From positions 329,897-393,896 of the forward strand of contig JAKMXF010000303.1 of assembly GCA_024704765.1 (NCBI GenBank): DNA of 64,000 bases. The letters run 5' to 3'. The notes beneath the pieces were generated by a model, which searched no databases, was not told the DNA's origin, and saw only the letters and a list, made by a program, of their open reading frames with translations. The stretch comes from Oopsacas minuta. Lineage: Eukaryota; Animalia; Porifera. Positions 32,682-49,837 of this stretch are shown here, piece by piece. How positions within the stretch are numbered: the first letter of the stretch is position 1; each line of letters opens with the position of its first letter. The position numbers were made by a program, and so were the translations under genes.

Positions 32682-33482
32682 CTATAAATTTGCACAATTC
32701 TCTTTGATATCCCCAAATTCCTCAATCAATCTGTTAGCTTCTGAAACTCTGTTCTGTCTATTCAAAATAATAAATGCTATTTTCACTGCTTCATGAGTGA
32801 ATCTCCACTCACTCAATTTAAGCTTGGCCAATAATTCTCTTGCTTCCATCATCAAAGCAGTACTACCCTCACATACATGAGCGAATGCACCTATAGCTAT
32901 AGCCTGACCTGTGATAGGAGAGAACACCTGCTCGAGTAGCTCATAGGCATCAAGAGCAAGTTCAAATTCCTGCTCCTTCAGCAAACTGTCCATTAGTATT
33001 GAAATAGGATAACTAGAAGGGAAAAGTGCAAATTCGGGATGTTGAAAAATATCAAGTGCCAATTCTGATGAATTCAATCTAATTAGTGTACGTATCAGTG
33101 CAAGGGGGAGACCTGGTATTTGAGGGAATACTGTGTTATGATATTTTCGCACAAAATCAAGAAAAGTTTCAATTTCAACGACGCTGTTACAAGCGTTTAC
33201 TAGGTTTATCATATGTCCTGGACTTAATGAACGATCTTCAAACCCAGCCTTAACAACGGCCAAACATTCATGGAATGCTTCTGGGGGAAGTTGCGGTACA
33301 AAACTAGGTATAAGACCGGTGTAGCCAAGAATATGTTTAGTTTTACCAAAGTAGAAGGGAGAAGTCTGTTCCTCCTGGTGTATATCAGCTTGAGAATGAG
33401 ATCTGAGTGGAGAATAAACTGGAGTGGAAGAGAGATATCGATAACTGGTCCTACTTACAGACCTCATTACAGTAGATATCAT
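32682..33482 (-). CDS. Mitochondrial helical-repeat (PPR-like, PTCD2/MRPS27-like) protein
   Basis: Arg/Ser-rich, acid-free N-terminal presequence; PPR-like segment LALDIFQHPEFALFPSSYPISILMDSLLKEQEFELALDAYE; intronless 266 aa. Confidence 0.55.
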   Translation of the reverse strand: MISTVMRSVSRTSYRYLSSTPVYSPLRSHSQADIHQEEQTSPFYFGKTKHILGYTGLIPSFVPQLPPEAFHECLAVVKAGFEDRSLSPGHMINLVNACNSVVEIETFLDFVRKYHNTVFPQIPGLPLALIRTLIRLNSSELALDIFQHPEFALFPSSYPISILMDSLLKEQEFELALDAYELLEQVFSPITGQAIAIGAFAHVCEGSTALMMEARELLAKLKLSEWRFTHEAVKIAFIILNRQNRVSEANRLIEEFGDIKENCANL

Positions 33483-33673
33483 TTCGTTTTGGTAATAATG
33501 CTGAATAACGGACTAGTAGTGAAACGAACGAATGCATATAACCCAGTTTCACAAAAAAAGTTATACAGTATGTCAATTAATAATGCAAATTGATAATGTA
33601 TGTATATCCAAAATAAACAGCACACACAAAATTGACAATCTAACAAACAAGCTATAAATTGATTCTATCAGGT

Positions 33674-36600
33674 CTAGATTTGATTAGCAGTTGACAACTT
33701 CTTTAGATGCTCCATAAAAACTTGAAGTGATACGTCATCAGTTAGGATAAATGTAGATCCTTCTGACTGAGATTGTCCCCAACCAAATGTAGTGTTGTGT
33801 GTGAGGGAAGGATTAACTTTGAATAACAAGAACCTAGCCTGACTACCTCCTTCATCACATATTATGTAGCGAGGCATTGGGAACCTCCCAACCATTATTT
33901 CCTTAGCATCAGCTCCTGGAGCCTCTAGTAAATTCTTCAGCGATTCATAAAGAGGCTGATTCTATAGGAGAATAACTAATAATGAATACATAGGTATTTA
34001 CATGTCAGTATACAAAATTAGAGCTCTAGGGGTCAGTAGCAGCTGAATTTCTTTAACTAGATTTTGAACATAATTAGACCCTAGGTCTTTCATAATTTAC
34101 CCAAATGTGTGAAAATTAGATTAATCAACGATAAATACAAGTACTATGTCCTATAAGAAACCAGATTGTCACTGACTAGAAATGTATAATCCAGGAGCAA
34201 CTCAATGGATTTTTGGTCACCGATAATATTCAGAAGTATGAACTGTTTTTGGTAGCTTTGAGTCCTTGGGGTGTCCTTAAGCAATATTAACCCCATGCTA
34301 CTTGACATGTGTGGGCAAATATTTGTAGCTTGGGGTTAATTTTGGTCAAGGATACCCCCAAGGACTCAAAACTATCAAAAACTGTTCATACTTCTGAAAA
34401 TTATCGGTTGGCCCTCTGTGCTCCTCGACTAGTAATCTCTATGATAAGTCAATTATCGTCTAACTTACACTAATTCAGATTTCAAAAATACTTAGCATAA
34501 TGTACATAATTAACTTTGGAATTATGTCAGAACTTATTTCTGTACGCTCGTAATTGTCCCTGATGAATACATACCTGATATCCCTTGTCCCTCCAAGTGG
34601 CAATGGTTTCGCCATGATATATAACAACATGGAAGAAAGTATCCATCAGAAGAATCTTATCTTTCTCTATACTAGTAGCATCCAGTAGAACAGGGCGAGG
34701 AGCAGCTCCAATAGAGTAGCTGTATAGGATAGGTTGTATCATGATTATACTGTTCTGTGTGTGTTCTCGTAGCAGTTTGTTACGATAGTAGGTTGTTTCA
34801 TCAGGAGAGTTATTGAACACCTAAATACATGGAATTAAACAAAGGTCAGTAATTTAATGAGAGTGGTAGAGAATGAGGAAGTAAAGAGGAAAACTAAGTC
34901 CGAAAGTATTTATTAGCCTAGAAATAGGAATAGGAATAGAAATTTCAACTCTCCATTTGTGGGTACACCTAAGTAGAGGACCCCCTCTAACTCGAAAATA
35001 TTATCCATTAACTGGGGTAATGTATTCAGTGACCGGATACACTTACTGGTGGGTGAATAATTATATTGCAATTTGCTTGCAGAAATTACAAGTATTATAT
35101 TATAGACAGAAGCCTTATTCATTCAGGGAAATTCAAACACTAACATCAGCCATAGAAGTGTGGAAGGGAAAACTGAATTTGTCATAACTATTTATTGGAA
35201 TTGTTTGATATTGGATTTTGTCCTAACTTTCAAATCGTTAAGGGGGACGCGGATTAGTGGATAAACCAGCTAAAATTGTTGGATTTAAGTATTTATCTTA
35301 ACTATTAGGTAGGTTGTGAATAATGTTCCTTTGTATTAGTGTATCTCTCCCCGGACTGTTGTCCAGACTTCTTAGCCAAGCCATGGTTGTTGGCGGATAT
35401 ATTTTTCAAGGAAATATATACATCCTGATAATCCAAATTTTTAGGACAAATTCCAGCTATCCGTGTGGAATATGGTAGCGATTGACATCTTCCACAGCAC
35501 ACACACACACACAGCACACACACACACACACACACACACACACACACACACACACACACACACACACACACACACACACACACACACAACAAAGTTGTAT
35601 ATTGTATGGCTGAATAATAAATACTACTTTCTATGAGAATAGATGGGACATACAAATTGACGTAATATATATGTGTGGTTGCTATTCTGCAGCGGATGTT
35701 ATAACACACCAGCTGTGCAGGGTTCCACTGTATTCGAATCACTTAATGAATTAGTTAACTTATATTAAACTACTGTATTATATATTAAGTTACCATATAC
35801 CTAACCTACCTGTAAGAACGGAGACCTCCTTAGATGGAACATAAACTGAGGGTAAAGAGAGAAGTTATCAGCTAGCACAAAGCTAGCAGGATCAGATGCA
35901 TTATAGTTACCGTATTTCTGACACAAACGAATAAGCATCTTATCCAACCACTTCAACACATCAGGATTCTCATCCACTTCAGCTTTATGTACTGCAACCC
36001 GAGCCATAAGCACTGCACTAGCTTCCTGGTCAAAACCACCTTTAATAAACTCTGGATGTTCCTTCGGGTCTACAAAGTTACGTCCTGTAGTAGTTACGCG
36101 GATATGACTCATACCATCAGCACTAGTGTAACGAGTTATGAACTGTATAACTCCCATACGATTAGCTGTTGGTTGGTTAGCTTGCTGGGTTGCTACCTCA
36201 AAGAATATCCCTAGTGTGGTAGAAGGATCAATAGTACATATGTTCCAACAAGTAGTACCACCTATACCAATCTCGTTATCAGATACTGGACCATTCTTGT
36301 TAGCAGATACGCAGGGACCTATAGCTCCCATTACCTTTAATTCACGAACACTCTTGACCTCTAGAGACGCGTTAAAGGACATTTTTAAAAGAGGAGAACC
36401 TTCCTTAGTCCCAAACACTTTCTGAAATGTCTGTCTGAATAGAGAAGTATTAAAACTATCTCCCATGACCATGTGACCAGCTGTAGAGTTGGAGAGAGAT
36501 TTCATCTCAAATAATCCTGTCTGATCCTGGAAACAAGCGAATATATCAATAGCCACGCCTGCAGCAGCTGCTCGCTTAGAAATTCCTTCATAGAACCTGG

Positions 36601-49030: not shown

Positions 49031-49112
49031 TCTCAATTGTTGTGCTGTTTGTTTGTTTGTTTGTGTTGTTTGTCCGTTGTTAAGGAAAGATTTATGGTAT
49101 GCTATTTGATCA
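49031..49112 (+). mobile_element. 5' part of a Helitron-like element
   Basis: A|TCTCAATTGTT..(GTTT)n..GTCCGTTGTTAAGGAAAG.TTTATGGTATGC. Confidence 0.6.
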
Positions 49113-49312
49113 TTACGTATTAGTGCTTTTGACAAAAAATGTGGAAATTGTGTTTGATATCTACAATTGCTCTATGGTCGAGGCTATCAAATAATTGCAT
49201 ATAAAAATTACAATATGAATCAGAAGATCTTTATAAGGAAACTAGAATGAGAATCGGAACGCTTTTAAGGATTGTATATTGCCATAATAATACAAGTATA
49301 CTTATTTTCGGG

Positions 49313-49837
49313 TTATGTTTCATGAAAGAAATCTGACTTGAAGACTATCCTCGGAGCTGCTGCTATCTGTTCGGGAGTAAACTCACTCAAGCGAGTAAAG
49401 TTAGACGGACCTTCCAGCTCCATAGAAATGTTAGAATTGAACGGATGCCTATCTCCCGGGAATAAATGTAAGTTCTCCATGAATCGCCTCTTACTAACAG
49501 GTAGTAGTTTAAACACAGCTCGTCTCAGCACCATGGTAGGGTCCAGTTTGTGTGCTTGTTCATGTGTCATAGACCTGAGTTGTCCGGGATACCCAGTATG
49601 CCAGCGTATCACTCTTGACTTCCAAGCATTTCTGTGCATGACCAGATTTGCACAGTTAGTAATCACCACACAGTCTCCATTACCTGAATTGGGTGCGTAA
49701 ATAGGCTTATGGAGACCTAGCAATATCCGTGAAACTATGTCAGCTACTCTACCCAGAATCTGTTTGTCTCCGTTCATTATGAACCAGATGGTAGAGTGAG
49801 TCCGTAACATCTGACTCAGATTTCTGTTAAGCGCCAT
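49313..49837 (-). CDS. MRPL13: Mitochondrial ribosomal protein uL13m
   Basis: WFIMNGDKQILGRVA, LLGLHKPIY, GDCVVITN, WHTGYPGQL, DPTMVLRRAVFKLLP. Confidence 0.93.
   Translation of the reverse strand: MALNRNLSQMLRTHSTIWFIMNGDKQILGRVADIVSRILLGLHKPIYAPNSGNGDCVVITNCANLVMHRNAWKSRVIRWHTGYPGQLRSMTHEQAHKLDPTMVLRRAVFKLLPVSKRRFMENLHLFPGDRHPFNSNISMELEGPSNFTRLSEFTPEQIAAAPRIVFKSDFFHET

What the first reader, a model, noticed from the sequence alone, without database searches (positions are those of the whole stretch)
32682..49837. Candidate operon-like gene array resolved by spliced-leader trans-splicing
Seen: eight consecutive intact genes on the minus strand, six of them intronless. Stop-to-ATG gaps are 72 bp (NAGK to ATP5F1D), 183 bp (CCDC177-like to SEC23), 191 bp (SEC23 to PPR), 306 bp (ATP5F1D to GAR1) and 472 bp (PHAF1 to NAGK). 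Each ATG is preceded by an acceptor-like YAG at 5, 5, 7, 11, 6/9, 16/21, 9 and 18/30 nt (MRPL13, PHAF1, NAGK, ATP5F1D, GAR1, CCDC177-like, SEC23, PPR), usually after a T/pyrimidine-rich tract. Branch-like CTAAC/CTGAC/CTGAT motifs occur, and SEC23 and PPR share TCACTACTAG. The 72-bp gap has no room for a 3' UTR, promoter and 5' UTR intron. The minus TRAF and the NHL gene have no AG within 25 nt of their ATG. Established: this layout typifies SL-resolved operons in nematodes and tunicates; I recall SL trans-splicing being reported for glass sponges but cannot verify that here. Caveats: AG near an ATG is common by chance, and a TGACGTCA (CRE) site upstream of SEC23 could indicate its own promoter.
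Basis: partly seen in the sequence, partly recalled or inferred. Interest (0 to 1): 0.82.

Follow-up and report, generated by a model that had tools for sequence, protein, structure and literature searches.

The report
Spliced-leader gene array in glass sponge
Eight tightly packed same-strand housekeeping genes of the glass sponge Oopsacas minuta get a short leader spliced on from separate small RNA genes, a mechanism already known in glass sponges, but the data do not show that they are copied together as an operon.

Summary
Eight intact minus-strand genes (MRPL13, PHAF1, NAGK-like, ATP5F1D, GAR1, CCDC177-like, SEC23, MRPS27-like) have the stated gaps of 72, 183, 191, 306 and 472 bp. Each has a YAG within 18 nt of its ATG (chance about 0.002).

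Spliced-leader trans-splicing is supported. RNA contigs carry non-genomic leaders joined at AG 46810/09 (PHAF1) and AG 45100/099 (NAGK), and a contig boundary implies AG 43199/98 for GAR1. I found at least 19 SL RNA genes elsewhere in the genome, in two classes, each with the leader followed by GTAAGTTG and two hairpins.

An operon is not shown.
- The array is three blocks separated by transposon-filled spacers of 2.5 and 2.7 kb.
- SEC23 has a CRE conserved in a second species inside its 183-bp gap.
- ATP5F1D stands without NAGK in two of six sponge genomes.

NAGK to ATP5F1D (72 bp; 119-163 bp in three relatives) remains the best candidate for a co-transcribed pair.

The scan has reached the same conclusion on several other windows of this genome. 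Leader splicing is already published for glass sponges; operons are not.

The parts
49313..49837 (-). MRPL13, single exon
   Evidence: ORF; Pfam Ribosomal_L13 at 2.4e-33
46786..49312 (.). 2.5-kb spacer holding a MITE-like inverted repeat (46996-47234) and a nested palindromic element (47242-48351)
   Evidence: Inverted repeats. DNA-run depth is about 100 times single copy at 46834-47227. RNA depth falls from 260 to 43 between 47425 and 48400.
46809..46810 (-). AG acceptor used for the leader on PHAF1, leaving a 23-nt 5' UTR
   Evidence: Run X4 has a loose end of 20 non-genomic letters at 46810. With the AG, these letters equal the 3' end of the class A SL exon on contig C312.
45556..46785 (-). 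PHAF1, single exon
   Evidence: ORF; Pfam PHAF1 at 5.9e-125
45421..45473 (-). Conserved block in the PHAF1 3' UTR, at the mRNA 3' end
   Evidence: Aligned across three species; unique in the genome. X4 depth drops from about 10000 to 153 across it.
45099..45100 (-). AG acceptor used for the leader on NAGK, leaving a 15-nt 5' UTR
   Evidence: X4 loose end of 9 letters at 45100. The unspliced unitig ends 29 nt below it, at 45071. The letters match the common 3' end of the class B SL exons.
44037..45083 (-). NAGK-like kinase (BadF/BadG/BcrA/BcrD ATPase family), single exon
   Evidence: ORF; Pfam at 6.3e-24
43965..44036 (-). 72-bp gap between the NAGK stop and the ATP5F1D ATG
   Evidence: Read directly. 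Orthologous gaps are 163, 131 and 119 bp in three relatives.
43976..43977 (-). Candidate AG acceptor for ATP5F1D, 11 nt before the ATG; use not shown
   Evidence: A TAG|CAT context is kept at 10-11 nt before the ATG in O. minuta, L044 and L045. No RNA junction was listed for it.
43476..43964 (-). ATP5F1D (mitochondrial ATP synthase delta subunit), single exon
   Evidence: ORF; Pfam; homologues
43198..43199 (-). Inferred AG acceptor for GAR1, leaving a 28-nt 5' UTR
   Evidence: The X4 low-depth unitig 43170-43473 ends 29 nt below this AG, the same geometry as the verified NAGK junction. This is an inference.
42630..43169 (-). GAR1, single exon
   Evidence: ORF; Pfam Gar1 at 3e-27
39951..42629 (.). 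2.7-kb spacer with dispersed repeat copies (42319-42542 and about 40230-40290), a 23-bp tandem array and microsatellites
   Evidence: the repeat gave at least 138 candidate copies in the genome
37769..39950 (-). CCDC177-like gene (DUF4659), with intron(s)
   Evidence: ORFs; Pfam DUF4659; orthologue alignment skips residues 68-145 of the first ORF
37653..37660 (.). Palindromic CRE TGACGTCA, 75 nt before the SEC23 ATG
   Evidence: AATGACGTCA is kept at the same offset in the 190-bp orthologous gap of locus L040
33674..37585 (-). SEC23, three exons
   Evidence: Exon 1 matches the Pfam Sec23 trunk, beta-sandwich, helical and zinc-finger domains; splice sites read
32682..33482 (-). MRPS27-like PPR protein, single exon
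   Evidence: ORF; Pfam MRP-S27 at 2.5e-5, just under its cut-off; an MRP-S27 gene sits at the same position in L040

Best explanation
This is a compact array of unrelated housekeeping genes in Oopsacas minuta. Their pre-mRNAs are trans-spliced, at an AG 15-28 nt before the start codon, to a leader of about 45 nt donated by a family of at least 19 SL RNA genes in two sequence classes. The array is not one operon. It is three blocks: MRPL13; then PHAF1-NAGK-ATP5F1D-GAR1; then CCDC177-like-SEC23-MRPS27-like. Transposon-filled spacers separate them. At least SEC23 appears to have its own promoter element. Trans-splicing removes whatever lies upstream of the acceptor, so promoters can sit in very short gaps or inside the upstream gene. 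Co-transcription is therefore allowed but not required. The 72-bp NAGK to ATP5F1D pair is the one place where a shared primary transcript, cut into two mRNAs by polyadenylation and leader addition, is likely. Shown: leaders on PHAF1 and NAGK, the SL RNA genes, the gene order and its conservation. Inferred: the GAR1 junction, leader addition to the other five genes, and any co-transcription.
For: Run X4 behaves as RNA: depth is 10-400 times higher in coding parts than between them. It carries non-genomic leaders at 46810 and 45100. Both leaders are found in the genome directly followed by GTAAGTTG, in a conserved gene family of about 105 nt with two hairpins that change on both sides between copies. 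Neither leader is encoded next to its gene in the window. Glass-sponge SL trans-splicing is published. Spacers of 2.5 and 2.7 kb hold repeats. RNA depth declines upstream of PHAF1 to 24-43. The CRE before SEC23 is kept in a second species. The order PHAF1-NAGK-ATP5F1D-GAR1-CCDC177L-SEC23-MRPS27 is kept in the most distant relative found, at 67% ATP5F1D identity. The NAGK to ATP5F1D gap is short in all four species that keep the pair.
Against: Only two junctions were seen directly. 228 loose ends of the single read-laying run were not listed, so ATP5F1D, the key downstream gene, is untested. RNA contigs at a steady low depth (131 and 153) run right across the PHAF1-NAGK and ATP5F1D-GAR1 gaps. 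That depth is above the 24-43 seen further upstream, which would fit one long precursor over all four genes. Contig depths are poor measures by the tool's own warning. The SL RNA lacks a canonical Sm site.
Confidence: 0.75

Rival explanations
1. The middle block PHAF1-NAGK-ATP5F1D-GAR1, or at least NAGK-ATP5F1D, is a true operon. One promoter upstream of PHAF1 (or of NAGK) makes a polycistronic precursor, which polyadenylation and leader trans-splicing resolve.
For: The 72-bp gap. The four-gene order and orientation are kept in three genomes and the NAGK-ATP5F1D pair in four. RNA contigs cover two whole intergenic gaps at a steady depth of about 130-150 even though downstream mRNA levels differ tenfold. 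Downstream genes NAGK and, by inference, GAR1 receive a leader.
Against: No molecule spanning two genes was seen, and a contig across a gap is not a transcript (tool caveat). ATP5F1D contig depth is 10-30 times that of NAGK (weak measure). ATP5F1D has no NAGK upstream, and no relic of it, in two genomes. A gap under 200 bp can hold a promoter element.
Confidence: 0.35
2. All eight genes form one operon.
For: They share a strand and all have acceptor-like YAGs.
Against: Two spacers of 2.5-2.7 kb are full of mobile elements. RNA depth falls to 24-43 in the spacer upstream of PHAF1. MRPL13 is not next to PHAF1 in L040 or L043. A transposase gene and a TRAF gene are inserted between GAR1 and CCDC177-like in L043.
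Confidence: 0.03
3. Each gene has its own promoter and none is co-transcribed. The tight packing reflects genome compaction alone, and the leader is added to monocistronic precursors.
For: The conserved CRE in the 183-bp gap. ATP5F1D is independent of NAGK in two species. mRNA contig depths of neighbours are very unequal. Operons have not been reported in hexactinellids.
Against: A 72-bp gap also has to hold the NAGK 3' end and the acceptor, so an ATP5F1D promoter would have to lie inside the NAGK coding sequence. Tandem gaps here (72-472 bp) are shorter than every divergent gap in the window (696 bp or more).
Confidence: 0.4

Closest known systems
Spliced-leader trans-splicing of hexactinellid sponges (Douris et al. 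2010 as cited in PMC7986045; Francis et al. 2023, PMC10282587, Aphrocallistes vastus)
   Same: A short non-genomic leader sits on the 5' ends of many mRNAs of a glass sponge. The leader length (about 45 nt from the conserved TTGCTTTA start to the donor) fits the 37-44 nt reported for A. vastus.
   Different: Here the donor genes themselves are located in the O. minuta genome: at least 19 copies in two classes. The O. minuta genome paper does not mention leaders or trans-splicing. I could not compare leader sequences because the A. vastus figure and the Douris paper are not held.
Caenorhabditis elegans operons (SL1/SL2; established knowledge)
   Same: Same-strand unrelated genes with gaps of about 100 nt, downstream genes trans-spliced, and more than one leader class.
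   Different: No polycistronic RNA is shown here. Evidence that class B is reserved for downstream genes rests on one gene of each kind. No canonical Sm site is present. An internal promoter element precedes SEC23.
Tunicate operons (Ciona, Oikopleura; established knowledge, from memory)
   Same: A very compact genome with very short or absent intercistronic spacers, where the poly(A) site and the acceptor nearly touch. The 72-bp NAGK to ATP5F1D gap would require the same.
   Different: Tunicates use a single short leader of 16-40 nt, and their operons are documented by transcripts. Here they are not.
Hydra spliced leaders and operons (PMC3273482, listed)
   Same: A non-bilaterian animal with several leader classes and a few operons.
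   Different: Independent leader sequences; no Rfam family matches the sponge SL RNA.

Membership tests
SL trans-splicing system | mRNAs of different genes carry a common 5' leader that is not encoded next to them | tested here: met
   Leaders at 46810 (20 letters) and 45100 (9 letters) in RNA run X4. Neither leader is encoded beside its gene: the only exact 11-mer match in the window is on the other strand, 37 kb away, and has no donor.
SL trans-splicing system | The leader is the first exon of a small separate RNA gene and is followed at once by a GT donor | tested here: met
   At least 19 loci have the leader followed by GTAAGTTG, invariant over 13 bases
SL trans-splicing system | The junction in the pre-mRNA lies at a 3' splice-site AG | tested here: met
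   Both observed junctions abut a genomic AG; a third is inferred for GAR1
SL trans-splicing system | The SL RNA has stem-loops and an Sm-binding site (RAU3-6GR) | tested here: inconclusive
   Two hairpins show compensating changes between classes. No canonical Sm motif is present in the conserved part of any of the 18 copies examined; only an A-rich AAAAAUGAG is conserved.
SL trans-splicing system | Trimethylguanosine cap on the leader | not testable with these tools
   Needs biochemistry
SL-resolved eukaryotic operon | Adjacent same-strand genes with very short intercistronic gaps | tested here: met
   Gaps are 72-472 bp within blocks. This is not met for the array as a whole, which has spacers of 2.5 and 2.7 kb.
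SL-resolved eukaryotic operon | One promoter and a polycistronic primary transcript | tested here: inconclusive
   Low-depth RNA contigs span two gaps, but no molecule joining two genes was seen. The 72-bp gap was not listed in the output. A conserved CRE precedes SEC23.
SL-resolved eukaryotic operon | Downstream cistrons receive the leader | tested here: inconclusive
   Met for NAGK, inferred for GAR1, not seen for ATP5F1D, SEC23 or MRPS27-like
SL-resolved eukaryotic operon | Linkage conserved in relatives | tested here: inconclusive
   NAGK-ATP5F1D is kept in 4 of 6 genomes and lost in 2. Glass sponges show extensive microsynteny in general.

The most novel reading that the evidence does not exclude
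Glass sponges have true SL-resolved operons, which would be the first in Porifera. The NAGK-ATP5F1D pair, and perhaps the whole PHAF1-GAR1 block, would be conserved since the split of distant hexactinellid lineages. One leader class (B, ending ...AAAACTTACAG) might be preferred on downstream cistrons, in the way SL2 is in nematodes.
Probability: 0.3. Interest if true: 0.7.

Novelty: new member of a known kind. Interest (0 to 1): 0.42.

Why it matters
Operons resolved by leader splicing are known in nematodes, tunicates, flatworms, chaetognaths and a few cnidarians. A 2021 survey states that none had been reported in hexactinellid sponges. Showing them in one of the earliest-branching animal groups would bear on how often this form of gene organisation arose. 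It would also bear on whether leader splicing drives genome compaction. What is solid here is more modest. The leader-donor genes of O. minuta are located and fall into two classes, real acceptor sites are mapped for two genes, and the array gives a defined, conserved test locus for a co-transcription experiment.

Tried and rejected
- **Own-genome lookup.** Exact-protein lookup of the window's ATP5F1D found nothing; records of this genome are withheld.
- **Relatives' RNA contigs.** Lookups of the L040 NAGK and GAR1 proteins, meant to find RNA-derived contigs with leaders in a relative, returned only the genome contig.
- **L041.** This 1074-nt contig joins the NAGK 3' half to ATP5F1D and ends 46 nt after the stop codon. 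It could be RNA or DNA, and the run type is unknown, so I did not use it as evidence.
- **Rfam.** No hit on the window or on 18 SL loci; no 5S or snRNA linkage was found.
- **RNAalifold.** On the raw SL alignment it gave a weak, mis-registered structure. I relied on single-sequence folds instead.
- **Papers.** Douris 2010, Derelle 2010 and the A. vastus supplement are not held.
- **Loose end at 45212.** It lies in a repeat (DNA depth is about three times single copy there) and has no AG at the junction, so I rejected it as a splice.
- **NAGK relic.** A search upstream of ATP5F1D in L044 and L045 found nothing.
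Full report
**Organism and setting.** The window is contig C303:329897-393896 of a genome of 61,460,524 bases in 365 contigs. 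That is the size and scaffold count given for Oopsacas minuta in Table 1 of Francis et al. 2023. Earlier notes of this scan name the same species.

**The observation.** ORF listing and direct reading show six single-ORF genes on the minus strand:
- MRPL13, 49837-49313
- PHAF1, 46785-45556
- a NAGK-like kinase, 45083-44037
- ATP5F1D, 43964-43476
- GAR1, 43169-42630
- an MRPS27-like PPR protein, 33482-32682

Two further genes have introns: CCDC177-like (39950..37769) and SEC23 (37585..33674). Pfam confirms all identities.

The stop-to-ATG gaps of 72, 183, 191, 306 and 472 bp are exact.

Every ATG has a YAG within 18 nt. With all ATGs of the window as background, that has P about 0.0017. For plain AG it is 0.045. 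The signal is therefore real but modest.

**RNA evidence.** There was one read-laying run (window 42500-48400). Runs X1 and X2 have flat depth and behave as DNA. Run X4 has depths of 2,000-57,000 in coding parts and 130-170 between genes, so it behaves as RNA. The genome paper says RNA-seq was produced. X4 shows three things.

- **PHAF1.** At 46810 there are 20 non-genomic letters which, read on the gene's strand, are CTTTCATAAAACTAAACTAC followed by the genomic AG 46810/09. This is 23 nt before the PHAF1 ATG.
- **NAGK.** At 45100 there are 9 letters, AAAACTTAC, followed by AG 45100/099. This is 15 nt before the NAGK ATG.
- **GAR1 (inferred).** The low-depth genomic-path contig 45071-45482 ends exactly 29 nt below the NAGK junction. 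That is what a 31-mer graph gives at a branch point. The analogous contig 43170-43473 then places a junction at AG 43199/98, 28 nt before the GAR1 ATG. The same logic puts the PHAF1 and ATP5F1D mRNA 3' ends near 45453 and 43444.

228 loose ends were not listed. No junction is available for ATP5F1D, nor for the genes outside the laid stretch.

**The leader genes.** The 22-mer of the PHAF1 leader occurs exactly twice in the genome. The two copies form an inverted pair 1.4 kb apart on C312. A third copy with two mismatches lies on C335. Each is followed by GTAAGT. BLAST and pattern searches bring the family to at least 19 loci.
- Class A ends ...AAACTACAG and is found on C312, C335, C233 and C166.
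- Class B ends ...AAAACTTACAG and is found on C10, C16, C19, C41, C133, C313 and C348.

The alignment shows four conserved features:
- a conserved start, TTGCTTTA;
- an exon of about 45 nt;
- an invariant TACAG|GTAAGTTG;
- two hairpins whose stems change on both sides between classes (GAGC/GCTC, GGC/GCC, GGCA/TGCC; GGTGTC/GACACC against GGTGTT/AACACC).

An A-rich tail follows the hairpins. No canonical Sm site is present, no Rfam family matches, and no 5S or snRNA gene lies beside the copies.

The 9 letters seen on NAGK are exactly the part shared by all class B copies, which suggests that several class B variants are used there.

Neither leader is encoded beside its gene in the window. The one chance 11-mer match is on the other strand and has no donor.

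Together this meets the defining features of SL trans-splicing. The mechanism is already published for hexactinellids, although the O. minuta genome paper does not mention it.

**Is it an operon?**

Evidence against a single eight-gene unit:
- Both large spacers are full of mobile DNA. They hold a dispersed repeat with at least 138 candidate copies, a MITE present about 100 times, and a nested palindromic element.
- X4 depth falls from 260 to 43 between 47425 and 48400, and to 24 for the contig beyond 48126. That suggests PHAF1 transcription starts inside the spacer rather than at MRPL13 (contig depths are crude).
- MRPL13 is not next to PHAF1 in two relatives. A transposase gene and a TRAF gene sit between GAR1 and CCDC177-like in one of them.

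Evidence against reading every short gap as promoter-less:
- The 183-bp gap before SEC23 contains AATGACGTCA 75 nt before the ATG. The same ten bases sit at the same offset in the 190-bp gap of the most distant relative, while the surrounding sequence has diverged. A conserved block also follows the upstream stop codon.
- A gap under 200 bp can thus hold a 3'-end signal, a promoter-type element and an acceptor.
- From memory only: COPII genes, including Sec23a, are targets of CREB3-like factors in bilaterians, which would fit this element. I did not check this.

Evidence for and against the NAGK-ATP5F1D pair:
- The gap is 72 bp here, and 163, 131 and 119 bp in three other glass-sponge genomes.
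- The first 20-45 nt after the NAGK stop are conserved and look like the 3'-end signal. That leaves almost nothing between the NAGK 3' end and the ATP5F1D acceptor.
- The whole order PHAF1-NAGK-ATP5F1D-GAR1-CCDC177L-SEC23-MRPS27 is kept in the most distant relative.
- Against: in two genomes ATP5F1D has no NAGK within 10 kb upstream and no relic of it. All six species nonetheless keep an AG about 10 nt before its ATG.
- Against: ATP5F1D contig depth is 10-30 times that of NAGK (weak measure).
- The steady depth of 131-153 across two whole gaps, above the 24-43 further upstream, fits a long precursor over the four-gene block. It fits read-through and outrons equally well.

**Verdict.**
- Leader trans-splicing is shown for two genes, inferred for a third and likely for the rest.
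- The eight genes are not one operon.
- Co-transcription of NAGK-ATP5F1D, or of the four-gene block, is plausible (about 0.3-0.35) but not shown.
- Operons have not been reported in hexactinellids, and no later paper in the held library says otherwise.
- The scan has already reached the same conclusion on several other windows of this genome. What this report adds is the SL RNA gene family with its two classes, the mapped acceptors, the six-genome synteny, and the conserved CRE.

Noticed in passing
window 45421-45473 (minus strand): A block of about 50 nt in the PHAF1 3' UTR is conserved in three glass-sponge species, while the rest of the gap is not. It contains TTTTGGAACTTTTTCAGACTCAGTTTGTATA. 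It is unique in the genome and coincides with the PHAF1 mRNA 3' end. Its first 18 bases resemble the start of the SL RNA genes (TTGCTTT..AACTTTT).
   Followed up: partly
window 37653-37660; L040:13611-13618: A full palindromic CRE (AATGACGTCA) sits about 75-80 nt before the SEC23 start codon and is conserved between two distant glass sponges. It could reflect ancient CREB/CREB3-type control of a COPII gene.
   Followed up: partly
window 42319-42542, 32343-32570, about 40230-40290 and 7991-8014 (all minus strand): A dispersed repeat of about 230 nt begins ACGAGCGCGCTTCGCTTGCTCGCG and has at least 138 candidate copies in the genome. Two copies lie just downstream of the GAR1 and MRPS27-like 3' ends.
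   Followed up: partly
window 46996-47234 and 47242-48351: A MITE-like element with 59-nt inverted arms is present about 100 times in the genome, judged from DNA-run depth. Next to it is a 1.1-kb nested palindromic element, both upstream of PHAF1.
   Followed up: no
window 41459-41573: A perfect tandem array of a 23-bp unit (CCCGATGAATACCAGTATCCCCC), about five copies, lies in the GAR1 to CCDC177-like spacer.
   Followed up: no
G000 C312:163162-164688; C348:25638-29480; C233:102382-103626: SL RNA genes often occur as inverted pairs 1-4 kb apart. None lies next to a 5S rRNA or snRNA gene. The conserved part of the RNA has no canonical Sm site.
   Followed up: partly
window 39520-39745 (minus strand): Residues 68-145 of the first CCDC177-like ORF have no counterpart in the orthologues of L040 and L043. 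This stretch is probably an in-frame intron, so the gene would have two introns rather than one.
   Followed up: no
L036:2239-4575 and L043:12845-15181: An intact 778-residue piggyBac-type transposase gene (DDE_Tnp_1_7) sits just downstream of GAR1 in two related sponge genomes but not in O. minuta.
   Followed up: no
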